A DNA stretch of 64,000 nt, taken from assembly GCA_002269645.1 (NCBI GenBank), contig NIVC01000273.1, positions 1 to 64,000 on the forward strand, written 5' to 3'. This DNA is from Macrostomum lignano. Taxonomy: Eukaryota. The notes beneath the pieces are model-generated. The model was not told the DNA's origin. It saw only the letters and a list, made by a program, of their open reading frames with translations, and ran no database searches. The first letter of the stretch is position 1. Each line of letters opens with the position of its first letter. Below are positions 4,273 to 38,310 of the stretch, piece by piece. The position numbers were made by a program, and so were the translations under genes.

Positions 4273-5188
4273 ATGCAGAACTTGGGGCCGCAACTCGGAG
4301 CGATAGGAGGCTCTCTGAGCAGCACCTGCCTTTGCGTCAAAGGCCTGAGTCCCGATAGCAGCGACCTCACTATTCGGCAACTGATGACTCAGGAAGCTGG
4401 AGTTCCCGATCACGCCATCGTGTATTCTCAGGCTATTTTAGACAAAACCACCGGCCATTGTAGAGGTTTGATTCCATTATATTATGTTTATGCTATTTTA
4501 TTGTTGAATGCATTTATGTTTACTCCTAAGACCATCCGCTAAACCCTAACCGACACCAGGCCTCGGCTTCGTTGAGTTTCAAAACGAGTCGCAGGCCAAC
4601 CAGGCTTTGGAGGCGATTCAGCGGCGGCCAGTGCAGGGCGATAGACGCTTGCAAATCGGATTCGCTCTTGTGAGTGCTAGTGTCATACGTCAGCAAACAT
4701 TTTCGTAGGGAAGTCCACAAAATATGAAAGTAAAGCTTATAGTTAAATCATTTTTAATGGCTATTCAATCTAAACAGGAGAACGAGAAGGATCTTACTAG
4801 CGTGTACTTGTGGAATTTGCCGGTGTCGTGCAGCGATTATTGGATTCGACAGGTCCTTGTCAATAGCCTCATCATGAACAGAAAGATTACTCAGCCGATT
4901 AAGTCCGTCAAGGCCCTTCCAGCCAATCCAAAGTACTCAATCGGATTCATTCGCTTCGGAGAAGAGAGCGATGCAGCAGCAGCGATTGAGTTCTTTATCA
5001 GAAACGGTCTCGAGTTCAGCTATCGGTTCGGATGCTCGGACCGGCTTGCGGCTAGACTGGCAGACAAAGCAAGCCCCAGAGCAAGGCTTGATCAGATCGC
5101 TCGGCTGTCTGCCAATCAGCGAGGGTCTATGAATGATGGCCGGTCAATGAGCTTTGAGGACATCGTAAAGCCGAATCCGGTTCTCTCT
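4273..5188 (+). CDS. Copy A: tandem RRM (RBMS/alan shepard-like) RNA-binding unit, exons 4273-4465, 4560-4669, 4778-5188
   Basis: GT-AG introns 4466-4559 (phase 1) and 4670-4777 (phase 0) join CLCVKGL...QAILDKTTGHCRG|LGFVEF (RNP2/RNP1) and VYLWNLP...SIGFIRF...RLAD. Donor GTGAGT at 5189. The same intron positions occur in copies B/B'. The 3' end is unresolved (a small exon may start at 5261). Confidence 0.8.
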
Positions 5189-5534
5189 GTGAGTCAACTC
5201 GATCTGCTGAATTTTAACTACAACTATAGAACGAATCGATTTAATCCTATTGTCTGACAGGGGAAGGCTTTGCAGAGCGATTCAAAAGCAGCAAAGTGCG
5301 TACATCATTGTGCTATGTGAAACACAGAAACAATCGCTTTAAAGCCCAGACAGGAAGTTAGAAAACAGATGCTGTGTTCCCTTATCCGTCGTACCAAGTA
5401 ACGTTGCTTTGTCACTAGGATACTCGAATGTACTCGTATATGATGCATTGTGCTTTTCTTTATCAATTCACCTATATGTACTTTATTCAACTTTATTTTA
5501 CCGATTATCCGAATTTAATTACTTTTTACATCAG

Positions 5535-8093
5535 GAAATCTCTGCGGAGCCACTCCAGCTAAAGGACGCTGAGAGCCCCTTCAAGTGGAATGCTCACGAA
5601 GGCTCACTAAGAACTCCAGAGGATGTAATTCGCAAACTGTCTGAAAAACTTAAGCTGGAGCCGATGCTATCCGCAGCGTATGGAGGTCTGCTTGCTGCTT
5701 ACCATTCTGCTGCTTCTCCAAGCCGCAAACTGATTGATTTTAGCAAGGCAAGAAAGCACCTGAAGGATGCAATAGAAGCTGCCAATAGTGCCCATCAACA
5801 TCACGTTAGGTGCGACTTTGTCCTGGAGGCCATCTCTCTTCATCTGGATCAACAACAAAAGAAAACGTCTCCTGAGTTCGATGAACGCGTAAAGGCTCTG
5901 GGTCAGGCTTGGAACGTTCCAGATAATGCACAGCGAATCGAAGTCAGAGCCAATGCATTTCACGTCAAGGCACTGGCACTGTTTAACCAAGGGATAGAGA
6001 AATACGTCCAGGCAGAGGAAGCTGTTAGGACCAGCTTGAGCTTGCGACCCGACAATTTCATGTGCGTCTACCTGCTGGCGTACATTTTAGCGCGCTTGCG
6101 CAGATACCGCAAAAACAGGGCTGCTGCGGGTCCAGAAGAGCTGCTCCTGTGGAAGCGGAGCGAGGAGCTCGCTAACTTGCAGAACCTGGACGATGCGCCC
6201 AAAGAAATTCGGCTGTATTACCAGCAGTTTTTAATTAACTATTCAGAGGCACTTTTGAATAACGCTGACCTAAAGGAAAAGTGCCAAAGCTTGGCTTCTG
6301 AAACGTTCCTGGCATTAAAGAACCTGAACGCAGAAGATTTAGAATGCCACTACCGAATCGCTCTCAAATGTGAAAAAGTGTTTCGAATTCTCAAATTGCA
6401 ATTGAATGACACTCAAACCCCACGAAGCATCTTACTCAGCCTAAAAGATGTAACAAAAAACTCTCAGTTATTTTTTTCATTGGCAAAACTGATGGAAAAC
6501 GAATCTGACTATGAAGAGTATGAGAGTTTGCTCGTCCGAGCTCAGCAGGTGGCGCCCGAGCCTGGACACATTTGGGTAGACGTGTGTTTGCAGGAATACC
6601 GAGAGGAAAGACCGAATGATTTCACTCACGAGTTTATTTTGGACGAGTTTGATACGATGATAGCCAAATACAAGGATAATTTTAGAAACAAGTCTGCAAT
6701 TCAGTATGCCAAGGGAGCCTACATGTGTCGGCGGCAGCTCGTTGACAGCGGCTTTGAGTCGATGGTCGAAGCAGTTCAAGTGTGTCCTGATGTCAGAGTT
6801 TACTTTCCTCCTTGGAAAAAAGAAAAAATATTGCAAATTCTATGCGAACGGACAGAAAGACCCGAACTGGAGGCTTGGTTCAGGCTGCACATCATGAACT
6901 GGGATTTTCAATCTACACAAATTATTTGCGAACGCTTTCAGAAGGCGCTGCAAAGTGAAAACTCGGATCACCAGCTGGTATATGAGCATCTTGGTCTGTT
7001 GTACTTTCGCCTTCGAGACTTTCAAGCTGCAGAAGAAAATTTCCGAAAACTTCAGTCTGAAAATCCTCGCAGAAACTCTCTGCTGTCGTCCGCTTTGCTC
7101 AAACGTGCCGAATCAAGAGATGAAGCTGAAAAGAGAGACTTGATTGTCGAGGCTCTCCGACTTGGAAACCCGGAGGCGTGCCAGCCCGCTCGACTCTTGC
7201 TGGACAACCGACTGGATCATCAGCTGCGGTTCCCTCTAGAAGCCATCAAGCAGAAGTACTGTCCTAAAGACCCCGAGAGTGAGATGCAGATCGTGCCGTG
7301 GCTGTTCAGCAAGGACTCGTACGAGCTGCTCGCTCTGATCAGCATCGCGTCAGAGAAGAACTATGAAAACTACTCAAAAACGTCGCCTCTGGTCCAGACG
7401 GATCTGCGGAAATCGAGACTGGCTCTGGAGCGTCTAGAGCAGCGCGGGAAACAGACTGAAAGCAAGTATTATAATGCCATCATGGAAACCCTGAAACTCG
7501 CAAAAAGTGCAATGGATGGATTAACTGCAAAACTGGATGGCTACGAAATGGAAAAGAAACTTGATTACTTCCCATACGGCTTCCGGTATATGACTGTAAA
7601 AAAGGATGAGAGCAAAAAGTTGATTTGCGGATTACAGAAACAAAGCCACGAAAATCGAAGAACGGAGATAAATAAGAAACTTTCAAATTTGCTCAAGTTG
7701 AAGGCATCCGCCACTGATGAAGCGAATCAGAGAGTAAATGCGCTCGTTGATTTGCTGAGCACTCGAGAATCAAAAGCGTTTCAGTTCCAGCAGCCATTTG
7801 CTTGGCTTGTGATCTGGCAGGAGTTGAGAAACAAAGCGGAGCACTCGAGCGCACAGAAGCCCATGAAGACTTTGATTCCAGAGTTATTGGAGGCCTGGAA
7901 CTGCGACCCAGATTGTGCTGGAAGCGTCGCGCACATGGCTGCGGAGTTCGCTGAGGAGACACGACTGATATTCGAGGCCGAGACTGAGGCGCTTCGAGCA
8001 GCCACTGGTAAGACCGGAGTACCAGTAGAAGATTTGAACTCAGCCCAGTCGAGACCCACCAAGAAGTTTTTGGCTTTGCATCTTTCTGACTGA
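5535..8093 (+). CDS. Copy A: single giant exon, IFIT-like TPR protein with C-terminal HEPN-like domain (852 aa)
   Basis: Uninterrupted ORF beginning at a polypyrimidine/CAG acceptor (AG|GAA ATC). TPR motifs include YEHLGLLYFRLRDFQAAEENFRKL and AEEAVRTSLSLRPDNFMCVYLLA. RNKAEH at 7827-7844; stop at 8091-8093. Confidence 0.8.
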   Translation, partial: EISAEPLQLKDAESPFKWNAHEGSLRTPEDVIRKLSEKLKLEPMLSAAYGGLLAAYHSAASPSRKLIDFSKARKHLKDAIEAANSAHQHHVRCDFVLEAISLHLDQQQKKTSPEFDERVKALGQAWNVPDNAQRIEVRANAFHVKALALFNQGIEKYVQAEEAVRTSLSLRPDNFMCVYLLAYILARLRRYRKNRAAAGPEELLLWKRSEELANLQNLDDAPKEIRLYYQQFLINYSEALLNNADLKEKCQSLASETFLALKNLNAEDLECHYRIALKCEKVFRILKLQLNDTQTPRSILLSLKDVTKNSQLFFSLAKLMENESDYEEYESLLVRAQQVAPEPGHIWVDVCLQEYREERPNDFTHEFILDEFDTMIAKYKDNFRNKSAIQYAKGAYMCRRQLVDSGFESMVEAVQVCPDVRVYFPPWKKEKILQILCERTERPELEAWFRLHIMNWDFQSTQIICERFQKALQSENSDHQLVYEHLGLLYFRLRDFQAAEENFRKLQSENPRRNSLLSSALLKRAESRDEAEKRDLIVEALRLGNPEACQPARLLLDNRLDHQLRFPLEAIKQKYCPKDPESEMQIVPWLFSKDSYELLALISIASEKNYENYSKTSPLVQTDLRKSRLALERLEQRGKQTESKYYNAIMETLKLAKSAMDGLTAKLDGYEMEKKLDYFPYGFRYMTVKKDESKKLICGLQKQSHENRRTEINKKLSNLLKLKASATDEANQRVNALVDLLSTRESKAFQFQQPFAWLVIWQELRNKAEHSSAQKPMKTLIPELLEAWNCDPDCAGSVAHMAAEFAEETRLIFEAETEALRAATGKTGVPVEDLNSAQSRPTKKFLALHLSD

Positions 8094-8984
8094 AAGCTTT
8101 GTTTATCTATTGACCATTTCTGTGTTTTCGCTTGAGGCTTTTCTGAATTATGTACCGACAATGTTGCATGTAGTGTCCTGAACGGCGCGTTCAGACCGGA
8201 TACTGACTGGAATATGACTAACTACTGACTAAAGTTGCTGCTGCCCGAACGCTTTTTTTATTTACATGTACTCCCGTACTCAGTCTCGGCACCCGCTGTA
8301 GATTTTTAAGGGTTTTTAGCGTTGACAGTTTCGTATTTGCTTTGCTTTTTAACTTCGACCTGTTTCGTTATTTTTTCTTACCTAACAAATTATGTAATTT
8401 TCCCTTTGACCAAGAAGTGCACTGTTGTGCAGCCTTCATGTACTTTTATTAATTTTGTCTTTTGCGAGTTTAAAATCACTTTCCAATTTTTTATTAATTT
8501 GCTCATTGAAGTTACTCTTAGCAGGTCCTGGTTTCTTCTGAGTTCGAGCAACTTCTCGCTTCATTCATTTGGCCTAATATATAAGGTGTGATAAAATTCC
8601 ATTGCCGTTTTTAATTGAAGCACGCAGCCACACACAACGCTGCTGAACCAACATGGACTTTTAGCTATAAGTACGAGCTATTAGATTCCTTGATTGACTT
8701 TTGTAAGCCCTCAAAATTTTTGTACGCTTATGTTTTTCATGTACTAGGCTTTTTGGCTCTCTTTAGGCCTTTCTAAATCCCACTGATATGCCACCAAAGC
8801 TGTCCAATGGGTTACTTCGGCCATCTAAGTCAATTCACAACGTCACCACAAAGTAACAGTGCTTTGCTTTTCTTATTAAATCCAACTGTTGATACCAAGT
8901 TGTGCTACTGCTGTTAACTGTTTCTTAGAATCAGTCTGTGAATTAGTCGCTTAGTACATTTTGAAAGTATTCAACGTATATAGT

Positions 8985-9716
8985 CTGGTAGCGTCTAATG
9001 TATTATTCTGGTAGCGTTCACTATATAAGTCTGGTAGCGTCTATTGTATTATTCTGGTAGCGTCTATTGTATTATTCTGGTAGCGTCTATTGTATTATTC
9101 TGGTAGCGTCTATTGTATTATTCTTGTAGCGTCTATTGTATTATTCTTGTAGCGTCTATTGTATTATTCTTGTAGCGTCTATTGTATTATTCTAGTAGCG
9201 TCTATTGTATTATTCTGGTAGCGTCTATTGTATTATTCTGGTAGCGTCTATTGTATTATTCTTGTAGCGTTTATTGTATTATTCTTGTAGCGTCTATTGT
9301 ATTATTCTGGTTGCGTCTATTGTATTATTCTGGTAGCGTCTATTGTATTATTCTGGTAGCGTCTATTGTATTATTCTGGTTGCGTCTATTGTATTATTCT
9401 TGTAGCGTCTATTGTATTATTCTGGTTGCGTCTATTGTATTATTCTGGTTGCGTCTATTGTATTATTCTAGTAGCGTCTATTGTATTATTCTTGTAGCGT
9501 CTATTGTATTATTCTGGTAGCGTCTATTGTATTATTCTTGTAGCGTCTATTGTATTATTCTGGTAGCGTCTATTGTATTATTCTGGTAGCGTCTATTGTA
9601 TTATTCTTGTAGCGTCTATTGTATTATTCTTGTAGCGTCTATTGTATTATTCTGGTAGCGTCTATTGTATTATTCTTGTAGCGTCTATTGTATTATTCTG
9701 GTAGCGTCTATTGTAT
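8985..9716. repeat. 23-bp minisatellite, ~32 copies
   Basis: Unit GGTAGCGTCTATTGTATTATTCT with few variants (CTTGTAG, CTAGTAG, GGTTGCG) and no spacers. Confidence 0.95.
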
Positions 9717-22589: not shown

Positions 22590-23249
22590 TGTAGAAAAAC
22601 TAACGATTGAATTACTGCTGATTTTGAATTGAATAGAAAAAGGAAAAGACCAGGCTTGAGAGCCAGCCCTCCATGCAGCGTATATTATTTATAAAACTAA
22701 CGTAGGGGGTTGAGTCGAGAATAATAAAGGGAGGGGTGGAATAGATAAGAAACCAATTTGGGGGGGGGGCTAGTCGATCGATAAATGGTGGAAGAGAGAA
22801 AACGCTAACAATGTACAAACAGCTGAGAGAGAGGGAGAAAATTAAACAAGGCTAGGCGATAGAGTGAATTATTCCAAGGGCAAAATATTGTGAAACAGAA
22901 TTTCGCGACAAGGATAAAGGCAAAGCACAAAAGAAAAAAAATTTTTTAGCCAAGTATGCCAACGCTGAGTGACAGAACAAGTAAGGGCCAGAGCGACCCC
23001 AACCCCAACCACCTCACACCACGCACACTGCAGAGGGCAGAGCACAGACCATACTCGTATAGAATATAGACTGCGAATCTGCGAGACTCAAGCAGACCAG
23101 TGCTTGAAATTTACTTATTACGTCATTATATAGACTTTTAAAACCTCAGGGAGGCAAAATGAATATTTCCTTGCAAAAATATCCCGCAAAAAACTCAAAC
23201 AAGCATTCTTATCAATACAATCAGCTTCTAGCGTATCGAAAAAAAGAGA

Positions 23250-24005: not shown

Positions 24006-25577
24006 TGTATTGACAGTAATAACCAAGCCTAATATTGATACTACCAATAAAAACAACCGTGTGTATTTCTCGCACGTTAGCGTCTAACTTAGCGAGCTGT
24101 CTCTCTTTTAATCCAGCTCAACTTCAGCTCGCAGGCTTGCCCATAGATATAGTTCGTACTAAAAGGCATACATATCATTCCTCCTTTTCTTTAAAAAAAA
24201 TTGTTCAGTCAAAACAGTTCAGTTCAGTTAATTCGCAACAAAAAAATCCGGTTTCTTCAGTTTTGACCGGTCACGCAAAACACGTTGGTTCGGATGCTGT
24301 TTCACATCTTGGCCGTCCTTTGGCTTGATATCGAAGCTTGATGACGCGGCTAACTTTCGAGTTTTGTCTATGGCCCGCGAAGACTTGCCAGTCTGACCAT
24401 GATGCTCTAGATTTGGTCCCGTCGATTCAGCTTCCTCTTTTGCATCCTTTTTCAACTTGTAGCTATTCTTGGCATTGTGTGCTTGCGTTAGTTCTGTGTC
24501 GAAATCACACTGTGGCTGGGGCACAACTTCGGTTTCAGATTTGATCAGATGATCCACGTGTCGTTTCCAGATTTGTCCGTTGACTTCCACGTGGTAGGAC
24601 AGCGGCCCAGTCTGTTTCAACACTTTGGCTTGAGCCCACTTGTTTTCTTTTTCCATCCTGAAATCAAAAACTAGCACTATATCTCCAGCCTGAAACTCTC
24701 GGTGAGGAATATGTTCCCGGCGCATCATCTGCTTACTTTGCGAATCCAGGACTCTCCCGTATGTGTCTGGCTTCAGGAAGTCCAGCCTTGTCCGTCTTGC
24801 ATACGCAAGCATCATCTCGGCAGGTGACTTGCCCGTTGTGCTATGAGGCGTGCTTCTATAGCGGAATAGGAAATTGTGCAGGCTCAGCATGGCATCACCG
24901 TGGCTCTTCATGCCTGCTCTGATCGCATTCTTGGCTGTTTGAACCATTCGCTCACTGAGCCCGTTGGTTCTTGGATGTCCTACAGCACTGAAGATGTGAT
25001 GGATGTTATTTCGCTTGGTGAATTCAGCAAACTCCTGTGATGCAAACTGGCTTCCATTGTCGGTCAGTATCTGTCGAGGTATTCCAAACCGAGCAAATGT
25101 CTCTCGAAAGCGTTGAATGGTGTTCGCGGCACTGGCAACTTTCATTGGAAAAACCTCTACCCATTTTGATGTGGCATCTACGATTACCAACCAATTGAAT
25201 CCGAAACACGGTCCGAAAAAATCTGCCTGAAGTCTCGTCCATGGCTTTTCTGGCCAACTCAACGGGTGAACAGCAGATTCTGGTGGTTTGCTTCGCTGCA
25301 GTTCGCATCCCTTGCATTGTTTCACAGCTCTTTCAATCTGTTGGTCGATTCCCGGAAACCAAACGTGCAGGCGAGCGATCGATTTCATCGATACAATCCC
25401 AGGGTGTCCTTCGTGCAGCAGGTCCAAAACTTGGTGTTGGAGGCTAGATGGAATGATGGCGCGTATACCCCAGAAGATGACTCCCTGCTCAAGACAGAGT
25501 TCGTTTCCTTTCTGACGGTATATCTCAAGCTCAAATTCACATTTCTCCGGCCAACCGTTCTGGCAGAACCTGATTAC
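24006..25577 (-). mobile_element. 5'-truncated Gypsy/Ty3 LTR retrotransposon (integrase, PPT, short 3' LTR)
   Basis: PPT AAAGAAAAGGAGGAA followed by TGATATG... (LTR ~24177-24006 ending ...CAATACA); pol is truncated at 25577 exactly where the B' duplication begins. Confidence 0.8.
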
Positions 25578-25607
25578 CTGCGGGGACAGACAGCATCGGC
25601 AGAGCAT
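24228..25607 (-). CDS. Gypsy (Mag/K02A2.6-like) integrase ORF, 459 aa; the first 10 codons come from the duplicated segment
   Basis: HHCC finger LHEGHPG...CKGC; catalytic ADFFGP, TDNGSQF, NGLSER; no internal stops. Confidence 0.88.
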   Translation of the reverse strand: MLCRCCLSPQVIRFCQNGWPEKCEFELEIYRQKGNELCLEQGVIFWGIRAIIPSSLQHQVLDLLHEGHPGIVSMKSIARLHVWFPGIDQQIERAVKQCKGCELQRSKPPESAVHPLSWPEKPWTRLQADFFGPCFGFNWLVIVDATSKWVEVFPMKVASAANTIQRFRETFARFGIPRQILTDNGSQFASQEFAEFTKRNNIHHIFSAVGHPRTNGLSERMVQTAKNAIRAGMKSHGDAMLSLHNFLFRYRSTPHSTTGKSPAEMMLAYARRTRLDFLKPDTYGRVLDSQSKQMMRREHIPHREFQAGDIVLVFDFRMEKENKWAQAKVLKQTGPLSYHVEVNGQIWKRHVDHLIKSETEVVPQPQCDFDTELTQAHNAKNSYKLKKDAKEEAESTGPNLEHHGQTGKSSRAIDKTRKLAASSSFDIKPKDGQDVKQHPNQRVLRDRSKLKKPDFFVAN

Positions 25608-25699
25608 TCAGTTCGGCAGCTTTATAATTTTTGATAGCTTGTGCAGGACAGGAGGTGTCGTCTGTGCAGTGTTGGGCAACTTCAATTGGTGCTTTGGCC

Positions 25700-28192
25700 T
25701 CACTTAGTGGTTGCTTTTTGAAGCTCCTCAGTCTCGGCCTCGAATATCAGTCGTGTCTCCTCAGCGAACTCCGCAGCCATGTGCGCAACGCTTCCAGCAC
25801 AATTTGGGTCGCAGTTCCAGGCCTCCAATAACTCTGGAATCAAAGTCTTCATGGGCTTCTGTCCGCTCGAGTGCTCCGCTTTGTTTCTCAACTCCTGCCA
25901 GATCACAAGCCAAGCAAATGGCTGCTGGAACTGAAACGCTTTTGATTCTCGAGTGCTCAGCAAATCAACGAGCGCATTTACTCTCTGATTCGCTTCGTCA
26001 GTGGCGGATGCCTTCAACTTGAGCAAATTTGAAAGTTTCTTATTAATCTCCGTTCTTCGATTTTCGTGGCTTTGTTTCTGTAATCCGCAAATCAACTTTT
26101 TGCTCTCATCCTTTTTTACAGTCATATACCGGAAGCCGTATGGGAAATAATCAAGCTTCTTTTCCATTTCGGAGCCATCCAGTTTTGCAGTTAATCCATC
26201 CATTGCACTTTTTGCGAGTTTCAGGGTTTCCATGATGGCATTATAATACTCGCTTTCAGTCTGTTTCCCGTCCTGCTCTAGTCGCTCCAGAGCCAGTCTC
26301 GATTTCCGCAGATCCGTCTGGACCAGAGGCGACGTTTTTGAGTAGTTTTCATAGTTCTTCTCTGACGCGATGCTGATCAGAGCGAGCAGCTCGTACGAGT
26401 CCTTGCTGAACAGCCACGGCACGATCTGCATCTCACTCTCGGGGTCTTCAGGACAGTACTTCTGCTTGATGGCTTCTAGAGGGAACCGCCGCTGATGATC
26501 CAGTCGATTGTCCAGCAAGTGTTGAGCGGGCTGGCACGCCTCCGGGTTTCCAAGTCGGAGAGCCTCGATAATCAAGTCTCTCTTTTCAGCCCCATCTCTC
26601 GATTCGGCTCTTTTGAGCAAAGCGGACGACAGCAGAGAGTTTCTGCGAGGATTTTCAGACTGAAGTTTTCGGAAATTTTCTTCTGCAGCTTTGAAGTCTT
26701 GAAGGCGAAGGTATAACAGACCAAGATGCTCGTACACCAGCTGGTGATCCGAGTTTTCACTATTCAATGCTTCGGTATAGAGCTGAACAATTCTCTGTGG
26801 TTCATCTGACTGCAAGTCAAGGTCCAGCATATGCTGCTGAAACCAAGCCTCGAATTCGCATCTGTCAGTCTTCTGGCTCAGATTTTTTAGCGTCTCATCT
26901 TTTTTCGATTTATGGATATGAAGTCGAACCTCAGGATAGACCTGCACCGCTTTGACCATTTCTTCAAAACCATCAGCAACGCTCTCTGTTTCAGAAAAGG
27001 TCATCATAAAGGCTCCCTTCGAGTATAGACAAACGGCTTCGTACCTGGGATAATCCTGATGATATCTTTCAGCGAGAGTGTCATACTCATTCAAAATATC
27101 GACGGCCGAAAACTTGTCGCTTCTTTTTTGTTTGAAGTTTTGATAATAAATATCAACCCAAATGTGTCCAGGCTCATAGGACAACTCTTGGGCTTTTATC
27201 AGCAGCTCTTCGCACCTTTCATCTTCTTTTTTCTCTTCAGCCAACATCGCTAATCTGAAAAGCAGATCAGAATTTTTAGTACCCTTCTCTAGGCGTTGCA
27301 ATATTTCCTGGAGTTCCTGCGTTTCTGGATGCTTGCGAATCTGAAAGATTTTTTCACACCTGAAGACAATTCGGTAATGTTCATCCAATACCTGAGTACT
27401 TATGTTTCTCAATGCTTGGTACGTGGCATTCGCGAGTTCCAGGCACTTGTCTTCTAAGCTCCGGTTGTTCAAAATAGCCTCCGCATAGTTTATTAAAAAC
27501 TGATAGAAGTACATTTTTGTTCCTTCATTCTTATACTGCCACCGGTGTTCATTTGCCAGATCATATGCACGATTCCACAGGAACAACTCCTCTGCATCAG
27601 CAGGCGTTCTGTTGTTGTGATGGCGACGCATCCGCGCACGAATATACGCCAGCAGGTAGATGCACATGAAGTTATCCGGTCGCAAGCTCAGACTTGCTTT
27701 CACAGCTTTCTCTGCTTCATCGTACTTTTTTATACCTTGGTGAAAAAAGTCCAGAGCTTTAACGTGAAAAACGTTGGCTCTGATCTCGATGCGCTTGGCC
27801 TCATCTTGAGTGTTCCAGATCTTGTTGAGGGCCTTGACGCGTTCAGTGAAGTTGAGTTGGTTCCGGCTCTGCTTAGCATCCAGGTTTAACTCAATGGCTT
27901 GCAAGACGAATTCGCATCTGACATGACCTTCATCTGCGTCTTTGCCATAGTCTACTGCGCTCTTCAAGTATTCCCTTGACTTTCTGAAGTCGATATGCTT
28001 ACGCCGATCGAATCTGGTTCCGTGATAAGCAGCCAGGAGGCCTTGATAAGCCGATGAGAGCATTGGCTCAAGTTTCAGTCGGTCCAAAATTGTGTCGATC
28101 ACATCCTCTATATTTTTGTCGGAGCCATCGTATGCGCACCATTTGAATGGGTTTTCGGCGTCTTTCAGTTCGAGTGGTTCCTTTGTGATTTC
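25700..28192 (-). CDS. Copy B': intact IFIT-like TPR-HEPN giant exon (830 aa)
   Basis: Acceptor AG|GAA ATC ACA at 28192; open to the TGA at 25700-25702; RNKAEH at 25871-25888. Confidence 0.82.
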   Translation of the reverse strand, partial: EITKEPLELKDAENPFKWCAYDGSDKNIEDVIDTILDRLKLEPMLSSAYQGLLAAYHGTRFDRRKHIDFRKSREYLKSAVDYGKDADEGHVRCEFVLQAIELNLDAKQSRNQLNFTERVKALNKIWNTQDEAKRIEIRANVFHVKALDFFHQGIKKYDEAEKAVKASLSLRPDNFMCIYLLAYIRARMRRHHNNRTPADAEELFLWNRAYDLANEHRWQYKNEGTKMYFYQFLINYAEAILNNRSLEDKCLELANATYQALRNISTQVLDEHYRIVFRCEKIFQIRKHPETQELQEILQRLEKGTKNSDLLFRLAMLAEEKKEDERCEELLIKAQELSYEPGHIWVDIYYQNFKQKRSDKFSAVDILNEYDTLAERYHQDYPRYEAVCLYSKGAFMMTFSETESVADGFEEMVKAVQVYPEVRLHIHKSKKDETLKNLSQKTDRCEFEAWFQQHMLDLDLQSDEPQRIVQLYTEALNSENSDHQLVYEHLGLLYLRLQDFKAAEENFRKLQSENPRRNSLLSSALLKRAESRDGAEKRDLIIEALRLGNPEACQPAQHLLDNRLDHQRRFPLEAIKQKYCPEDPESEMQIVPWLFSKDSYELLALISIASEKNYENYSKTSPLVQTDLRKSRLALERLEQDGKQTESEYYNAIMETLKLAKSAMDGLTAKLDGSEMEKKLDYFPYGFRYMTVKKDESKKLICGLQKQSHENRRTEINKKLSNLLKLKASATDEANQRVNALVDLLSTRESKAFQFQQPFAWLVIWQELRNKAEHSSGQKPMKTLIPELLEAWNCDPNCAGSVAHMAAEFAEETRLIFEAETEELQKATTK

Positions 28193-28803
28193 CTGAAATC
28201 AATTATTGGACAGTCAGTTAAGGTTTTGATTAATTATCCTTTTGAGAAATTCTCTTTAAGTAGAGTATGCTGTCTAATAGTAGGAGAAAGACGAATCGCT
28301 CCGGCCCTTTTAGCGTGACTTTAACAATATACATAGCAATAGTAATATGCTATAGTCTTCTCAATTGTCATATCAATGCATTAACGAGCTACTACTCAGC
28401 ATTATTCCCCTCAGTGCCACTCTGCATCATTCTCCTACTGTATTAACCTTCAGACTTTGCAAGTATCGAATGAGATAAGCGATAAGGATTCAAAGAACCA
28501 CAGCAGCATCTCAGCTGACAGCAGCTGCAAGTTGCATTAACATGTACTCGTATTTTGTAAGCTTGGTCAGTTCGTACTATTAGTATGAGGCTATATTAGA
28601 GCATTTATATCTTAATACGAGCTATCTAGCGCATATCACTAGTCTGGTGTAGGGTAAAACCGAGGCTTGCTTGACTTAGCCTGCAGAATAGGTTTGATGC
28701 AATCAAAAGGCTAAACGGTGTCCTTTTAGACTCGCTTTACTTAGGCAGCTACCCACCTCCAACCCTAATTACAATTGGGTAGTACAGCCATGAGGAAACT
28801 TAC

Positions 28804-30697
28804 AAGAAGATGCGCGCTCGGCTTCACAATATCTTCAAGGCAGACTGGTCGACCACCGACATCACGGGTCTTTTTTTCAGATTTTTTTTCTGAAAATTTA
28901 GCAGCAAGCCGCCCAGAGCATCCATATTTGTGGGAGAGCCTTAGCCCATTGTGATTGATGAGTTGGATAACACATGAAGCACTGTCCTCTGTTGTAAATT
29001 TCACAATGCCTGTTGAATAATATGGGTTAGCACGAAAAATCCTGAATGACAAGATCGTATCCTCGCAACAATTGCATTCGTATAGTAGAAACTGTCTAAT
29101 CCACTCTATCGTGCAGTTGACAGGCAAATTCCATACGAACATCTCTTTGCCGTCCTTTTCTGCCTCCTGTATTTTGTACACGGTGGGTGCTCGGCATTGC
29201 ATTTGAAATGCTGCGCTATCAGAAAGTTATGTCTAAAAAATATCGAAGACTCACCCGAGCGAATTCGACCTTCAATTTTTCCTGGCTGGCATGTTTCGTG
29301 TCTTGCAGCTGCTGAATATTTCTTACTGCCATCTTTGCCCGCTCTGTGTTTCGAAGTTCAGCGAAGCCGATCCCTAAATGTGAGTGAAAGTTCTCGTTCA
29401 CTTTTCTTGCTCTTCGACTACAGTTTCTTTGTTCTGAAGCCTTAATTTTTTTGGTTTGAAAGTGAGTACTAGTAGTTCACTATCATACGAGTATTATTTA
29501 TCATGATCTATTATAGTAGTTAGGTAGGTACTCACAATTAAATATTTTAAATTTGCATCGCTAATTTAGGGGTTGTAGACTAGTGGTCGACTGAAAGGTC
29601 GGGGCTTCGATTTTCTACTCACTTGGAACAATTTGTGTCCTTGAGCAAGACACTTGACTATGCATTGTTTCAGTTCACCCAGCTGTAAAATGGGTGCCAG
29701 CATTAGCTGGGGTAATTGAGGGTGCGTGGCGAGGTATCCAGTCAATCCGGCGACAGGACGATCCGGCGACAGCCAAAACAGCGACAGTCAATCCGGTGAC
29801 AATTCGTAGTAAAACCCTATTACATGTAAACCGGCTATTGTTACTTAAACAGATTAGAGAGAGCTCTGATTTTTATAATTATTACAATTGCTATTATTGT
29901 TATTAGTTATTATTATTTGATTTTTAATAGAATGTATGCAGGAATAGCTCCGATAATTGGAATTTAGCGGGTTCAAAATGCGCGGATTTCTGTCAACTAT
30001 TAACATATTGTTTTCTTATAATGATGATACATGTACATTTACATGTATTGCTTTAAAAATGGGAAACTGCATTAAATCATTTATTTTCACTAGGCCGCAC
30101 ACTAGTTTTTCATCTGCAGTTTGATGTGACACGGCCTAAACTGTCAGAAGTACGGACATAATGTACCATTTTTATTAGAAAATATACTGGTCGTCTAAAG
30201 TGAATTATTTACATGTAAAATTAAAATAGAGTTCATGTAAAGTTTTATTTGTATCTAAAATCCGTAAAATCTACTATACAAAATCTGTCGCCGATTTGAC
30301 TGTCGTCGGATCGTCTGGAAGCCCGTGGCGACCCCCCCCCCCTCAGTCCTTGGACTGAAAAACTGCTCAATAGCTGCGGCTATAAATTATACGAGTATAT
30401 ACGTCGCATATTATTACAATCGCAAACTAATGCACTTGGCATACTTTGCATGATAAAACAGACTACATAAGAAATTGAAATCGCACCTTTACACTGGCCA
30501 GATTGCGAATCCAAGATGGCTTGAGCAAACACTATGGAGTGATCAGGAACTCCGGCTTCGTGCGCAATGAGCTGCCGAATTTTCAGATCTGTTGTGCCGG
30601 GAGACAAACCCCGGATGAAGATTCGGGTGCTGGACATGCGACTGTTGCTGTTGGAGTCACTGGCGGGCGCACTGGCGGCGGACGATGAAGCTTGCAT
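28804..30697 (-). CDS. Copy B': tandem RRM unit, exons 30697-30487, 29373-29255, 29166-28804
   Basis: Same exons as copy B at offset 13978/13979. Confidence 0.8.
29568..30364 (+). mobile_element. CORE-SINE with nested MITE (29733-30323), duplicate of 15590-16385
   Basis: Same TSD CGTGGCGA and TIRs as in copy B. Confidence 0.7.
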
Positions 30698-33600
30698 CCT
30701 GAAGCTGTGTTGAGGAACACCTTAACTCTTGGAAGGATGTAGAGTAGAGCGAGCTTGTGTGCTTTGGGTTTGGGGTTAGCTCTACTCATAAGGCCCAGTC
30801 AAGGAGTTCTTAATTTAGCAAGTTTCAAATGGACACTCACGGGGGGGAAGAAACCGATAACAAATATGGCCGCTTGAAAAAGGCTCCTTTGCTTCCCATC
30901 CCTCAGTTCCGCCTTCCCTGCCGAGGCCCGCCTCCATCTCTGGGCCTGCCCAACTCTCCAAAATGTACAGGGGAAACCTAGACCCTAAGAGTTAAATGGG
31001 CTAGTTAGTACGAATTGAGGAACGGAGGAACCGAAAGCAAGCTGGTGTACGTCTCTGGTGTACAACCCCCGTGACCACAGCACTGGCCGTATTTATTGGG
31101 AAAGGGTTTCATTGGGGATTCACTATACTATAGGCCCATAGTGCATCAATGTAAACTCACTTGACTTATCACTGAACTTCTTGGCCAGGGAATACTTTAA
31201 ATATGTATGTAACTCTCCCCACTGCGGTCGGGGCAACCCTGCAACCCACGCCGAGTCACTCCCAAGAGCCAGCCAATTCCTTACTTAGCCCCAGGCCGAG
31301 AATTTATCCATATCCAAGTTTTGAAGCTTTAAAGGCGTCGTTTTACAAGGTCGAAATTTCATAAGGAGGAAAACTACTTCATCGTTCTTGTCAAATACAT
31401 TTTCGTACTGTCCTTGTGAAATTTGACCTTATGAAGTCCCTTTGCTAGAGTTTTCGATGTTGTGAAATTTCGACCTTATGAAGGAATGTGCTTTCGACGT
31501 TGTGAAACTTCGAGTTTGTGAAACCCCTCCAATTCAAATACTAGTGGACCCAAAATCAGGCAACAAAATTTACAATTAAAATAGCTAATTTGACAGAAAT
31601 ATATCGCATCCCACATACCGTAAAGATACTCTGTGATGGAGACGAATAGAAGTAAATTGCATGCAACACAGTAAATAAAAGGCTTCAAGATACTTCGAGG
31701 AGTTATTTAAACAGGATTTAATGAAATTATTTAAAATTTTATTTTCATTTACCTATAAGGTTTTAACGTAAGCTTGAAGGATTCAAATTGGCTGGCTTGC
31801 GAACACTTGCAGTCGTTTTATTTCGATCTGAGATGTGGACTTGCGCTTGCCAACGAGCAATGGCCGATTAGTCGTAATTAGCAAAGTGGCGTTCTTCTAA
31901 TAAATGAGTTCTAAGTTCCAATAGAAGATAAGGGAAAGAAAGAAGACATGAGCGTGCATGAATAACGGCCGAGAGAGCAGACACATGTGTACAGATTTTA
32001 CATTATACGACGACTTTTTAGGCCAGCGATATTTACCTTTCTATTCATTTTATGGCAACGCATGCTCTTCGCACTGTCACTGTCCTTTCTGTGCCTAATC
32101 TTTTCTGAAGAGTGAACACTAGACATTTTCATAAGTATTCTGGTCAAACCGAGTTTTACTCAGTTGGTCCCATAGATCTTATATTCCTATCATAGATCTG
32201 TTAAAAGGTAAAGGTGTACGAGACGTCGTATGGTTTTGGTTGGTCCTCAGTTTAAAGTCGAATTGAATTCTCCGTAGCTCTGTCAAAAAATCTTTTGACT
32301 CCGTATTTTGTTACCACTTGTGTTGGCGGTAAGGCGTTAAAACTGTGGGATGAGCTGGCTTGGGGTTGGTGTATTAGGAGGCGGGCTTCGGTGTTATGAA
32401 TTTTATGAAGTGTCGGTCTTGTGAAGGATCATGCAGTAGTTTTCGACGCTGTTAAATTTCGGTCTTGTGAAGGCAGGTGTCTTTCGGAGTTATAAACTTT
32501 GGTCTTATGAAATTGACCCTTTATTCCTGTCTCATTTTGTGACCCTAAGATGTCTTGTCTTCTCAGATTTTTTCTTTCGCTTTTCTTTATCTGACTGATA
32601 ATTGTTTCGCAACCATAAATTCGCTTGCAAGTGGCACTGAAAGCTAGCTTGTTTATTGTTCTTACGTGTATATTCTATAAGGACTGATTCAAGTGCCTGT
32701 GGGTTAACGCTCCACCAAGCTCAGTGAGCAAAAAATACGAGCGTAATTTCTTCCCGTGAATACAATGTGCCAGACCTGCTGAGTGAGTACCGCGATGAAA
32801 AAGCTGCTGTGCCAATATCAGACGGCTTAGACGATGCTACAGGTGGGAAACTCTGGTGCTCGACCTCGACGGGGTGCTGCTCTTCCCACCAATGATGACG
32901 GCTTTCGGTTGTCGGAGAGTCGGCTTAGCATGGTTGGCTGCGTCGAAAAGCTCTGCGCAGAAGACCTCTGTGCTCTGCGTTGCAGACGACATCAAAACTG
33001 ATATCATCTGCCGAGGCGCTGAGTTCAGCAGTTCTTCTACCTTGGCTGCCTGTTTCAGGGCCGTCGGTGGAAATCTGCGGCGTCGCCGCGGGCTTGCCTG
33101 GGCTCGCTTTCTTAAAGCGACGCCAATCCTGCAGTTCGAGACAGAGAGCGACGTTTGGTCAGGCGGTGGTCGAGGCCATGCTGTTTTAAACGTCGAAACC
33201 TGGACGCTGACGGGCTCGTTCGAACAGCATCTTGAAGGCACACGCACCGCCTATAGTATGCTCCTGTTATACTAGAACGTGCATACGAATAGCATTAGCA
33301 GTAGAACTACAATCCCCCTAACAATTGTTTTTGCTGCGCCGGAACGGAGCAACGTCGGCACACAAAATTCAAGAACACGGAGTAACTTCTTGTTCCGCAC
33401 TTTCTCAAACAAGAATAAATACTCGATACAGATATTCGACGATTCTGCCAAAAGGTCGGATTTTTTCATAAGTGCCAGTGTATTCAGTACACCCCTGCGT
33501 GCGCAAATCAGCACTGCGCCTCAGTGCAGCCTTGCCAAGCCTCCAAAATTCGTTTGCACATCGATCACATGTGTCTGCATCAGCTCTGACTTCGTTGATC

Positions 33601-36489: not shown

Positions 36490-38310
36490 CTTAGAAAGCA
36501 GATTCTTATGTCCCACCAGATAGGCTAAAACACCGTCTCATAGCTGAATTTGAAAAGTTTATCTGTAAAGCTCAAGGATACGTTAAAAAGAGGAGCAATA
36601 GACTTGTGCACCAGGCTATGAACGGCCTTAAGAACAATGAAAATATCAAGATTGTTGGCTTTGATAAAGGCTATGGCGTTGCTGCTTTAGATAGTAAGGA
36701 TTATTTTGACAAACTTGAGAAAGTGATCCAGGACAAACTCAAGTTTCAATGCCTTGCTACCGATGATCAAGTCACTATGGCTCACCCGGTTTAAAAAATG
36801 AGAAATCTCTTCAGAATTTTTTGAGAACTTACGTTAAGCCACACGTGACCCCTGAGATCTTTAAGTTGATTGTCCCAAATGGTAGCCAACCTGGACAATT
36901 TTACGGTCTGTGCAAAGTTCATAAGGATGGTCACTCTTTAAGACCTATTGTTTCGATGATCAACACTTCGGAGTATGAGCTAGCTAAATTCCTTGACAAT
37001 TTAATTAAACCTGTTATCCCTTCTGAGCACTGTGTGAGTTCCAATCAACAGTTTATCGAGAGCCTCAGCAATACCACGATTAATCAAACTGACAGGCTTT
37101 ATAGTTTTGATGTTGTTTCACTGTTCACCAACATCCCTCTCGAATTCACCATTGAGCTGGCTGCTGATCTTGTGTATGAAAAAGCCAATCCACCTCCTTT
37201 CTCTAAAGCCACTTTTAAGAAGATGCTCGAATTCGCCACCTCCGGCATCTTTCTTTTTCGGGACAAATATTACAGACAGATTGATGGGTGTGCCATGGGC
37301 AGCCCTCTCGCCCCAACCCTCGCTAATTTGTGCATGGCCCACTGGGAAAAGGACTGGATGGCCCTCCCTTGTGCGCCTCACTTCTACAAACGCTACGTCT
37401 ATGACACGTTTGCGATCTTTGAGGACGAAGCTAAGAAGGACGAGTTTTTTAAGTTAATCAATTCTACTCATGACAATATCAAATTCACGGTGGAGGGGGG
37501 AGGCAGAAGACTTCCTTTCTTAGACATTGACGTTGACGCCACCGATGAAACTATTTCGACCAGCGTGTATAGGAAACCTAGCTTTACCGGGCTTATGCTT
37601 AGGTTTGACGCCTTGTGCCCTAGACAATGGAAAACCGGATTGATTCGTGGCTTTCTTCACCGGGCTTTTTCCACTTGCAGCCCTTGGAGACGTTTCCACA
37701 ACGAAGTTGAAATCCTCACCAATCTGCTCAGCTACAATGGCTATCCTAAGAACTTTGTGATGAAAATTGTCAACTCTTTTCTCAATGACAAACTGACTGA
37801 ACCTACTCGGATGAAAGTTCGTGATTCCACATCTGAATGTCCCTTGATCACTTTGCCTTACTTTGGTGTTTGTTCTGTAGAGTTTAAAAAGAAGTTAGAA
37901 AAGCTGCTCCGTAAAGACTTCAACACTCAAATCCGTGTTGTGTTTCGCACCGAAAAGATTGCTAAGTTCGTCTGCAAGTTGAAATCCAGTGTTCCACGTC
38001 CTCTCGCGGCTGGTGTCGTGTATAAATTTGTTTGCTCTGAGGACCAGAGCATCTCCTACATAGGAAAAACTAAACGACACTTATGCACGAGGGTCAGAGA
38101 GCACTGGCTAAAAACTCTGCTAATAACGAACACCTGCTAACCTGCAACTCTTGTTGTGAAACCACACGAAATGATAAAGGCTATTGATTTTTGTAATAGA
38201 GATCACATGCTCTGCCTATTAGAAGCCCTGTACATTAAGACCAAACAGCCCACGTTAAATAACCAACTTGCGATGGGTGGGGCCAGCCGTCAACTCAGAA
38301 TTTTTTAGCT
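36490..38310 (+). mobile_element. Penelope-like retroelement (RT + GIY-YIG endonuclease), decayed
   Basis: ORF 36821-38140: FYGLCKVHK, LRPIVS, SFDVVSLFTNIP, QIDGCAMGSPLAP, LPFLD, VYRKP, VVYKF..C..YIGKTKRHL.TRVREH; the catalytic YVDD reads YVYD (37394-37405). Confidence 0.92.

What the first reader, a model, noticed from the sequence alone, without database searches (positions are those of the whole stretch)
6954..7995. Sharp mosaic boundary: effector half homogenised, sensor half divergent
A versus B/B' are roughly 40-60% identical at protein level over the first ~470 aa. From SENSDHQ (A 6954; B 12783) to AETE (A ~7995; B ~11743) I count only ~14 substitutions in ~345 aa, and synonymous sites are also nearly identical. 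Purifying selection alone would not preserve silent sites, so this points to a ~1.04-kb gene-conversion or domain-swap tract covering the last TPR and the HEPN domain. A variable sensor with a constant effector is typical of immune receptor families. It would also keep HEPN dimer interfaces compatible for A/B heterodimers.
Basis: partly seen in the sequence, partly recalled or inferred. Interest (0 to 1): 0.75.

Follow-up and report, generated by a model that had tools for sequence, protein, structure and literature searches.

The report
Gene-conversion tract between flatworm paralogs
Two neighbouring, oppositely oriented copies of a flatworm (Macrostomum lignano) RNA-binding gene are old and diverged over most of their length, but their last 1 kb has been repeatedly copied from one to the other, which is a solid and fairly ordinary case of gene conversion in a gene family whose front half resembles vertebrate antiviral IFIT proteins.

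Summary
A (6954-7995, +) and B (12783-11743, -) or B' (26761-25720, -) differ at 31 of 1042 bases (97% identical, dS 0.065). The 1.4 kb upstream in the same exon is about 60% identical, with 50% amino-acid identity and saturated synonymous sites. Maximum chi-square puts the breakpoints at 6956 and 7994.

The window is eukaryotic: Macrostomum lignano. The genes have four exons and encode RRM-RRM, a TPR-like half and a conserved C-terminal module.

A second copy of the locus (contig NIVC01004067.1) shows that gene conversion is recurrent:
- The two A copies are 99.6% identical in the 5' half but differ at 51 of 747 sites inside the tract.
- One B copy keeps an in-frame island of about 50% identity inside the tract.
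- Eleven sites are shared crosswise between A and B.

The HEPN label is not supported. There is no profile hit, and the arginine of the RNKAEH motif is valine in every other subfamily.

The N-terminal half does match the N-terminal subdomain of IFIT proteins (hhalign 93%). Mammalian IFIT1/IFIT1B show the same kind of partial conversion.

B's frameshift is a one-base loss in a C4 run and may be an assembly error.

Verdict: real, well explained, a new example of a known process.

The parts
4273..5188 (+). Gene A, upstream coding exons (about 4273-4467, 4559-4669, 4778-5188) encoding two RRM-type domains
   Evidence: tblastn of M. lignano protein P0003/P0001 matches at 100% in three blocks. Pfam RRM_1 hits P0001.
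5535..6953 (+). Gene A, diverged 5' part of the last exon (IFIT-like TPR half). About 60% nt and 50% aa identity to B/B', with synonymous sites saturated
   Evidence: IFIT5 is the top PDB hit of the family profile. hhalign probability is 93% against IFIT5+IFIT1 N-termini.
6954..7995 (+). Conversion tract, A arm: 1042 bp, 97% identical to B and B'
6969..7067 (+). The only Pfam-detectable TPR motif (HQLVYEHLG...SENP), at the 5' edge of the tract. Homology of other family members (P0009, P0017) to the C-terminal module starts here as well
7563..7961 (+). Conserved C-terminal module motifs: YFPYGF (7563-7583), W..W (7803-7817), RNKAEH (7827-7844; only N and H are family-invariant), AHMAAEFAEET (7929-7961)
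7996..8093 (+). A-specific C-terminal tail and stop codon, with no similarity to B
8094..11722 (.). Spacer of 3.6 kb at 36% GC between the convergent genes. It holds a 23-bp x 32 tandem array (8976-9716), an (AG)13 run and a 40-bp x 3 repeat (11293-11422)
11743..12783 (-). Conversion tract, B arm
12467..12468 (-). One C missing from a CCCC run, which splits B into ORFs 12400-14124 and 11723-12454. This is the only difference from B' within the tract
12784..14218 (-). Gene B, diverged 5' part of the last exon
14826..16718 (-). Gene B upstream exons (about 16506-16718, 15277-15396, 14826-15191), RRM region
   Evidence: tblastn of P0005/P0004.
25720..26761 (-). Conversion tract, B' arm (97.0% identical to A, no indel)
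25578..30774 (-). B' gene: a direct segmental duplicate of 11601-16802 (99.67% identical), with an intact last-exon ORF at 25700-28102

Best explanation
The window is from the flatworm Macrostomum lignano. A (+) and B/B' (-) are old paralogs of a Macrostomum-restricted gene family. Each encodes two RRMs, an IFIT-like TPR half and a conserved C-terminal module. A and B converge, with 3.7 kb between their 3' ends.

The last 1.04 kb of coding sequence forms an inverted repeat. Non-allelic (interlocus) gene conversion has overwritten it repeatedly, in patches, and apparently in both directions. The rest of the genes, at 60% identity, is too diverged to take part.

Shown here:
- the step in divergence, including at silent sites;
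- phylogenetic incongruence between the 5' half and the tract;
- at least three separate exchange events since the two available locus copies split.

Inferred:
- The sharp edges persist because heteroduplex formation needs near-identity, so a homogenised block perpetuates itself and stops where divergence begins.
- The 5' edge sits at a module boundary used elsewhere in the family, so selection against hybrids in the N-terminal half may also contribute.

Functional reading (inferred, weaker): the diverged IFIT-like/RRM halves give different RNA-binding specificities, and both paralogs share one C-terminal module of unknown activity.
For: Organism and gene family:
- All homologues are M. lignano proteins, plus one unnamed ENA protein.

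The step in divergence:
- Nucleotide identity is about 60% before the tract and 97% inside it.
- pS is 0.77 before the tract and dS is 0.065 inside it.
- Breakpoints fall at 6956 and 7994, p = 5e-115.

Second locus copy, L001 (NIVC01004067.1):
- In the 5' half the sequences group by gene. Aw/Al are 99.6-100% identical, B/Bl 96-100%, and A versus B about 58%.
- Inside the tract only 2 sites are fixed A-versus-B differences (7718, 7928).
- Thirty sites are private to Al (7031-7466, plus one at 7613), where the window's A equals all B copies.
- Eleven sites group Aw with Bl and Al with Bw/B'.
- Aw versus Al differ at 6/1419 sites in the 5' half, 51/747 in 6954-7700 and 0/390 beyond (p = 3e-18).
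- dS between the A copies is 0.0066 in the 5' half and 0.072 in the tract.
- Bl retains an in-frame block of about 50% identity at 7584-7679. This looks like unconverted ancestral B sequence.

Independent data and context:
- UniProt models from another annotation also carry a B-type N-terminus joined to an A-like C-terminus (P0004). Further A haplotype mosaics occur in P0001 and P0002.
- GC3 is slightly higher in the tract, 0.56 against 0.50.
- P0009 and P0017 share the C-terminal module starting at the same TPR.
- Precedent: IFIT1/IFIT1B in cat are 97% identical in the 5' part and 63% in the 3' part (PMC4887208).
Against: - Only two locus copies were available, and both are assembly consensus sequences. 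No reads or population data were available, so fine-scale mosaicism could be partly a polishing artefact.
- The donor of the Al-type haplotype was not found.
- How a conversion tract first formed between sequences that were probably about 60% identical is unexplained.
- The GC3 excess is small.
- The functional part rests on a borderline remote homology (IFIT) and an uncharacterised C-terminal domain.
Confidence: 0.85

Rival explanations
1. A single chimeric origin. One recent partial inverted duplication or domain swap placed the same 1-kb 3' module on two old paralogs, with no ongoing exchange afterwards.
For: One sharp block with clean, in-frame edges. The same module boundary is used in other family members such as P0009 and P0017.
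Against: The two A copies are virtually identical in the 5' half yet 6.8% different in the tract. Crosswise shared variants exist, and Bl carries a private ancestral-looking island. Together these need at least three events after the locus copies split. The seamless collinear homology on both sides of the junction fits homologous exchange better than illegitimate fusion.
Confidence: 0.07
2. Assembly or polishing artefact. Similar paralogous 3' ends were collapsed or cross-corrected during assembly, which created false near-identity.
For: M. lignano assemblies are repeat-rich and the genome holds many near-identical copies. B and B' are 99.67% identical. B carries a homopolymer indel typical of long-read errors.
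Against: The 60%-to-97% step is present in three gene copies in this window and in two on an independent contig. It also appears in protein models from another annotation set (P0004). The tract is only 1 kb with unique flanks, so long reads span it easily. Cross-correction cannot turn 60% identity into 97%.
Confidence: 0.04
3. Extreme constraint on the nucleotide sequence itself, for example an RNA element, antisense pairing of the convergent transcripts or a small-RNA source, keeps the tract similar without recombination.
For: The genes converge, so read-through transcripts could pair over the inverted repeat (anatomy).
Against: The tract is the most variable part of gene A between locus copies, not the least. 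The A-versus-B differences within the tract are 14 synonymous and 17-18 nonsynonymous, with no sign of nucleotide-level constraint. Bl tolerates a 96-bp block of about 50% identity.
Confidence: 0.02

Closest known systems
Recurrent partial gene conversion between mammalian IFIT1 and IFIT1B (Daugherty et al. 2016, eLife 5:e14228; PMC4887208)
   Same: Neighbouring paralogs of a TPR RNA-binding family. One part of the gene is about 97% identical and the rest about 60%, also at synonymous sites. The breakpoint recurs at a subdomain junction, and conversion scrambles the phylogeny of the converted part. The numbers here are almost the same: 97% and about 60%.
   Different: Here the 3' part is homogenised and the IFIT-like 5' part diverges; in mammals it is the reverse. 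The genes are convergent (inverted repeat), not tandem. The proteins carry extra RRM and C-terminal modules. The host is a flatworm with no interferon system known to me (own knowledge).
Vertebrate IFIT proteins (IFIT1/2/3/5), antiviral binders of non-self 5' RNA ends
   Same: The N-terminal approximately 160 residues of the family profile align with IFIT5 residues 13-182. This includes the LxCHFTW signature, which appears as LECHFTW in paralog P0006 and as SPFKW/NPFKW in A/B. PDB E-value is 6.7e-5 with the next hit at 0.28; hhalign probability is 93%, against 10.6% for a generic TPR control.
   Different: Only the first subdomain is detectably similar. These proteins are about 950 aa, with two N-terminal RRMs and a C-terminal extension of about 300 aa that IFITs lack. 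The RNA-pocket residues were not checked. A 2013 survey reported IFITs only from jawed vertebrates (PMC3688568).
HEPN-domain RNases (Rx4-6H motif; for example the RNase L/Ire1 KEN domain, Cas13, toxin-antitoxin HEPNs)
   Same: The C-terminal region is predicted to be all alpha-helical, and A/B contain one RNKAEH (Rx4H) motif.
   Different: There is no profile match. The arginine is valine in all other subfamilies. The fold is unresolved.
Arm-to-arm gene conversion in inverted repeats and palindromes, for example on primate Y chromosomes (own knowledge)
   Same: Inverted repeat arms a few kb apart are kept near-identical by intrachromosomal conversion. The spacer is not homogenised.
   Different: The arms here are only 1 kb and lie inside coding exons of otherwise diverged genes. 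No spacer inversion is seen between the two locus copies.

Membership tests
Interlocus (ectopic) gene-conversion tract | Abrupt, statistically supported change in divergence between paralogs, seen at synonymous sites too | tested here: met
   pS 0.77 against dS 0.065. Breakpoints at 6956 and 7994, p = 5e-115.
Interlocus (ectopic) gene-conversion tract | Phylogenetic incongruence: flanks group by gene, the tract does not | tested here: met
   Five-sequence comparison with the second locus copy. There are 2 fixed A/B sites in the tract against dense fixed differences outside it. Aw equals the B copies at 30 sites where Al differs.
Interlocus (ectopic) gene-conversion tract | Evidence of more than one event (mosaic or shared polymorphism) | tested here: met
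   Eleven crosswise shared sites, the Al-private block, and the Bl-private island of about 50% identity.
Interlocus (ectopic) gene-conversion tract | GC-biased signature in the converted segment | tested here: inconclusive
   GC3 is 0.56-0.57 in the tract and 0.50 in the 5' half. The difference is small and has no polarity test.
Interlocus (ectopic) gene-conversion tract | Not an assembly artefact (read-level support) | not testable with these tools
   No reads were available. Indirect support comes from two contigs and independent protein models.
HEPN domain | Significant match to a HEPN profile | tested here: not met
   Pfam scans of A, B and five subfamily C-termini up to E = 10 give no HEPN family. 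The PDB profile search returned 0 hits.
HEPN domain | Rx4-6H catalytic motif conserved across the family | tested here: not met
   RNKAEH occurs only in A/B. The R column is V in P0006, P0007, P0009 and P0017. N and H are invariant.
HEPN domain | Four-helix up-down bundle fold | tested here: inconclusive
   The AlphaFold2 models are all-helical but have pLDDT of 46.6 and 47.9, so no fold search was justified.
IFIT family | N-terminal subdomain with the LxCHFTW signature and following TPRs | tested here: met
   PDB profile search gives IFIT5 as the sole clear hit (E 6.7e-5). hhalign probability is 93.3% over 151 columns, and the control TPR protein gives 10.6%. P0006 starts LEELECHFTW.
IFIT family | Similarity over the whole TPR superhelix, including the RNA 5'-end pocket | tested here: inconclusive
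   Later segments align collinearly with IFIT5 but without significance, scoring 2.3 and -1.2 bits. Pocket residues were not examined.
IFIT family | TPR-only architecture of about 470-490 aa | tested here: not met
   Two RRMs sit upstream and a C-terminal module of about 300 aa sits downstream.
IFIT family | Induction by infection and antiviral activity | not testable with these tools
   No expression or functional data were available.
NLR/STAND-type immune receptor (variable sensor plus constant effector) | Central NTPase (NACHT/NB-ARC) domain | tested here: not met
   Pfam finds only RRM and TPR.

The most novel reading that the evidence does not exclude
A, B and B' may belong to a genuine pre-vertebrate branch of the IFIT lineage. 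In Macrostomum this branch would have been fused to RRMs and to a new C-terminal module, with the conserved motifs W..W....N...H and AHxAAEFAEE and possibly enzymatic activity. Recurrent gene conversion would keep that shared output module uniform while the IFIT-like RNA-recognition halves diversify. That would make it an invertebrate antiviral RNA-sensor family evolving the way mammalian IFIT1/IFIT1B do.
Probability: 0.2. Interest if true: 0.65.

Novelty: new member of a known kind. Interest (0 to 1): 0.35.

Why it matters
For annotation, the tract matters in three ways. Trees or orthology calls built on the 3' kilobase of these genes will be wrong. The 'frameshifted' B may be an intact gene. 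And the labels 'HEPN' and 'prokaryotic-style immune receptor' should not be propagated.

Biologically, it is a clean, datable example of patchy concerted evolution confined to one module of a lineage-restricted gene family in a polyploid flatworm.

The side finding is that the diverged half is IFIT-like. If it is confirmed, it would push IFIT-type proteins outside the vertebrates and provide a second, independent case of partial conversion in that kind of gene.

Tried and rejected
- AlphaFold2 on the C-terminal 407 aa as a single sequence gave pLDDT 46.6. The 170-aa C-terminal domain with a 5-sequence alignment gave pLDDT 47.9. Both were too poor, so no fold search was run.
- The search for homologous proteins with the C-terminal alignment A1 returned nothing, not even the input family, so that search was wasted.
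- A profile of the C-terminal domain against PDB gave 0 hits at E<=10.
- Pfam at E<=10 on five C-terminal domains gave only noise.
- The look-up of encoding contigs for P0004 and P0001 found no record, so only one extra locus copy could be fetched.
- Literature searches for the locus tag, and for gene conversion in M. lignano, found nothing relevant. A search for IFIT in lophotrochozoans was uninformative.
- Purifying selection as the cause was rejected on the dS values and the between-copy divergence.
- A prokaryotic reading of the ORFs was rejected. ORF density is low, and the window has introns, microsatellites and LTR retrotransposons.
Full report
WHAT IS THERE

The window is not prokaryotic. 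ORF density is low: 22 ORFs of at least 150 aa in 64 kb. It holds microsatellites, a 23-bp tandem array, and LTR-retrotransposon ORFs for Pao peptidase, integrase and reverse transcriptase. The only homologues of the long ORF are proteins of the flatworm Macrostomum lignano annotated as 'RRM domain-containing protein'.

Gene A (+) has four coding exons, at about 4273-4467, 4559-4669, 4778-5188 and 5535-8093. Gene B (-) runs from 16718 to 11723. B' (-) runs from 30697 to 25697 and is a direct segmental duplicate of B: 11601-16802 matches 25578-30774 at 99.67% identity. A Pao/BEL-type LTR element (17143-22910) lies between B and B'.

A and B converge. Their 3' ends are 3.6-3.7 kb apart, across a spacer of 36% GC.

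THE OBSERVATION

- From A 5531 to 6953, A and B are about 60% identical in nucleotides and 50.1% in protein over 471 codons. The proportion of synonymous differences is 0.77, which is saturated.
- From 6954 to 7995 they differ at 31 of 1042 bases plus one 1-nt indel. Sixteen of 347 codons differ, dS is 0.065 and dN is 0.022.
- Beyond 8006 similarity is lost. B stops there, while A continues for 30 more codons.
- A two-breakpoint maximum chi-square scan puts the edges at 6956 and 7994, and Fisher's test gives p = 5e-115.
- The repeat finder reports the same block as two inverted-repeat arms, split only by the indel.

B's two ORFs result from the loss of one C in a CCCC run (A 7271; B 12467/12468). 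That indel is the only difference between B and B' inside the tract. It could be a real, very recent pseudogenising mutation or a long-read homopolymer error.

WHY IT IS GENE CONVERSION, AND RECURRENT

A second copy of the whole locus was recovered from GenBank contig NIVC01004067.1 (assembly GCA_002269645.1), held as locus L001. It is collinear with the window: 98.7% identical on the A side and 95% on the B side, with no spacer inversion.

I aligned five sequences: Aw, Al, Bw, B'w and Bl, where w marks the window copy and l the L001 copy. In the 5' half they sort strictly by gene. Aw/Al are 99.6-100% identical, B/Bl 96-100%, and A versus B about 58%.

Inside the tract that structure disappears.
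- Only two sites (7718, 7928) are fixed A-versus-B differences.
- Thirty sites, 29 between 7031 and 7466 plus one at 7613, are private to Al. At these sites the window's A is identical to all three B copies.
- Eleven sites group Aw with Bl and Al with Bw/B'.
- Bl has a private block at 7584-7679.

Aw and Al differ at 6 of 1419 sites in the 5' half, at 51 of 747 sites in 6954-7700, and at 0 of 390 sites beyond (p = 3e-18). In dS terms this is 0.0066 against 0.072. Within the tract, the two copies of the same gene are therefore as different as the two paralogs are. That is the signature of sequence being moved between genes, not of constraint.

The Bl block is in frame and about 50% identical to everything else: SFIKGPDTDNKICALKKQLTHKKRREEIKKR against RYMTVKKDESKKLICGLQKQSHENRRTEINKK. 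It is most simply a remnant of the original, diverged B sequence that escaped conversion in that copy. If so, the ancestral 3' ends were as diverged as the 5' halves, and the window's B lineage was converted by A in that block.

At least three exchange events are needed after the two locus copies separated.

Protein models from a different annotation set show the same B-type N-terminus with an A-like C-terminus (P0004). They also show further A haplotype mosaics (P0001, P0002). Those models contain dubious predicted introns, so I weight them lightly.

GC3 is slightly higher in the tract, 0.56 against 0.50. This is compatible with biased conversion but not diagnostic.

WHY THE EDGES ARE SHARP (INFERENCE)

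Conversion needs long stretches of near-identity. Once a block is homogenised it remains a substrate, whereas the flanking 60%-identical sequence cannot form stable heteroduplex. Sharp edges therefore need no selective explanation.

The 5' edge does coincide with a module boundary, however. It lies at the only Pfam-detectable TPR (6969-7067). In other family members the shared C-terminal module starts at exactly the homologous 'HQL..E.LG' motif:
- the P0009 match to A begins at residue 474, which is nt 6954;
- the P0009/P0017 similarity begins at the same motif.

Selection against hybrids within the N-terminal half may therefore also contribute.

WHAT THE PROTEINS ARE

Pfam finds RRM_1 in the upstream exons and a single TPR. 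An exhaustive HMMER search of 1.8 billion representative proteins found only 10 hits. The real ones are all M. lignano hypothetical proteins, plus one unnamed ENA protein. The family is therefore lineage-restricted, with at least four diverged subfamilies.

C-terminal module. Its invariant residues form the pattern YFP.(A/G)F ... R(E/D) ... W...W....N...H ... The R of that motif is V in every other subfamily. No HEPN profile matches even at E = 10, and a PDB profile search is empty. Two AlphaFold2 runs gave all-helical models that cannot be used, with pLDDT of 47 and 48. HEPN is therefore unsupported, and the domain's activity is unknown.

N-terminal half. A family profile has one outstanding PDB hit, human IFIT5 residues 13-182. 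The E-value is 4e-4 with the full-length profile and 6.7e-5 with the N-terminal profile, and the next hit is at 0.28. Profile-profile comparison with IFIT5+IFIT1 N-termini gives 93.3% probability over 151 columns starting at the very N-terminus. A 29-repeat generic TPR protein gives 10.6% over 65 columns. The IFIT profile against paralog P0006 alone gives 80.5% and 32% identity. P0006 begins LEELECHFTW, the IFIT signature.

I regard an IFIT-like N-terminal subdomain as probable, about 0.7. Full IFIT membership is unproven: only the first subdomain is detectably similar, and the architecture differs, with RRMs in front and a module of about 300 aa behind. A 2013 survey found IFITs only in jawed vertebrates (PMC3688568).

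COMPARISON WITH WHAT IS KNOWN

The closest precedent is the recurrent partial conversion between mammalian IFIT1 and IFIT1B. Cat IFIT1/IFIT1B are 97% identical over nucleotides 1-948 and 63% in the 3' end, also at synonymous sites, with a recurrent breakpoint at a subdomain pivot (PMC4887208). Here the polarity is reversed: the non-IFIT 3' module is homogenised and the IFIT-like half is diverged. The genes are also inverted rather than tandem. Mechanistically this is ordinary ectopic conversion, like arm-to-arm conversion in palindromes (own knowledge).

VERDICT

The gene-conversion interpretation is confirmed and strengthened, because the conversion is recurrent, patchy and apparently bidirectional. 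The labels 'HEPN', 'effector' and 'heterodimer interface' are not supported. The 'immune-like family' idea gains indirect support through the IFIT-like half.

Caveats: there are no reads or population data, only two locus copies, and both are consensus assemblies. Fine-scale site patterns could be affected by polishing, although the main step cannot be.

Noticed in passing
window 5535-6050 (A), 14218-13700 (B), 28198-27700 (B'); paralog P0006 residues 7-173: The N-terminal part of the diverged half is specifically similar to the N-terminal subdomain of vertebrate IFIT proteins (LxCHFTW signature; IFIT5 is the top PDB hit; hhalign 93%). IFITs have been reported only from jawed vertebrates.
   Followed up: partly
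window 12467/12468 (-): B differs from its intact twin B' by one missing C in a CCCC run, which splits the ORF. It is either a very recent pseudogenisation or a long-read homopolymer error.
   Followed up: partly
window 11601-16802 and 25578-30774: A 5.2-kb direct segmental duplication (99.67% identical) carries the whole B gene. The copies are about 14 kb apart, with retrotransposon sequence between them.
   Followed up: partly
L001 about 18900-19000 (Bl; aligned to A 7584-7679): In-frame 96-bp island of about 50% identity inside the otherwise homogenised tract of the second B copy. It is probably a relic of the pre-conversion B sequence.
   Followed up: yes
window 17143-22910: Pao/BEL-type LTR retrotransposon with 98% identical LTRs of about 320 bp (17143-17465 and 22590-22910). 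Its ORFs are broken (Pao peptidase, integrase zinc-binding domain). The LTRs contain G10 runs.
   Followed up: partly
window 24228-25607 (-): A 459-aa integrase ORF (rve plus Integrase_H2C2) abuts the 3' end of the B' duplication.
   Followed up: no
window 8976-9716: Tandem array of 32 copies of a 23-bp unit (GTATTATTCTGGTAGCGTCTATT, 94% matches) in the AT-rich spacer between A and B.
   Followed up: no
window 11293-11422; L001 about 17200-18110: A 40-bp tandem repeat (3 copies in the window) lies where the second locus copy has about 0.9 kb of extra sequence, which suggests a variable minisatellite.
   Followed up: no
window 43850-58200: Dense nest of direct repeats, with units of about 0.3-1.5 kb at 77-96% identity. 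Several ORFs of 180-400 aa have no Pfam match. This may be a tandemly amplified element or gene family.
   Followed up: no
window 36821-38140 (+): A 439-aa ORF with a reverse-transcriptase (RVT_1) domain, so another retroelement fragment.
   Followed up: no
proteins P0009, P0006 (other M. lignano loci): Other family members carry long C-terminal RGG/GGRGRGG-type repeats after the conserved module. P0009 lacks the IFIT-like half altogether. The C-terminal module therefore combines with different RNA-binding-type partners.
   Followed up: partly
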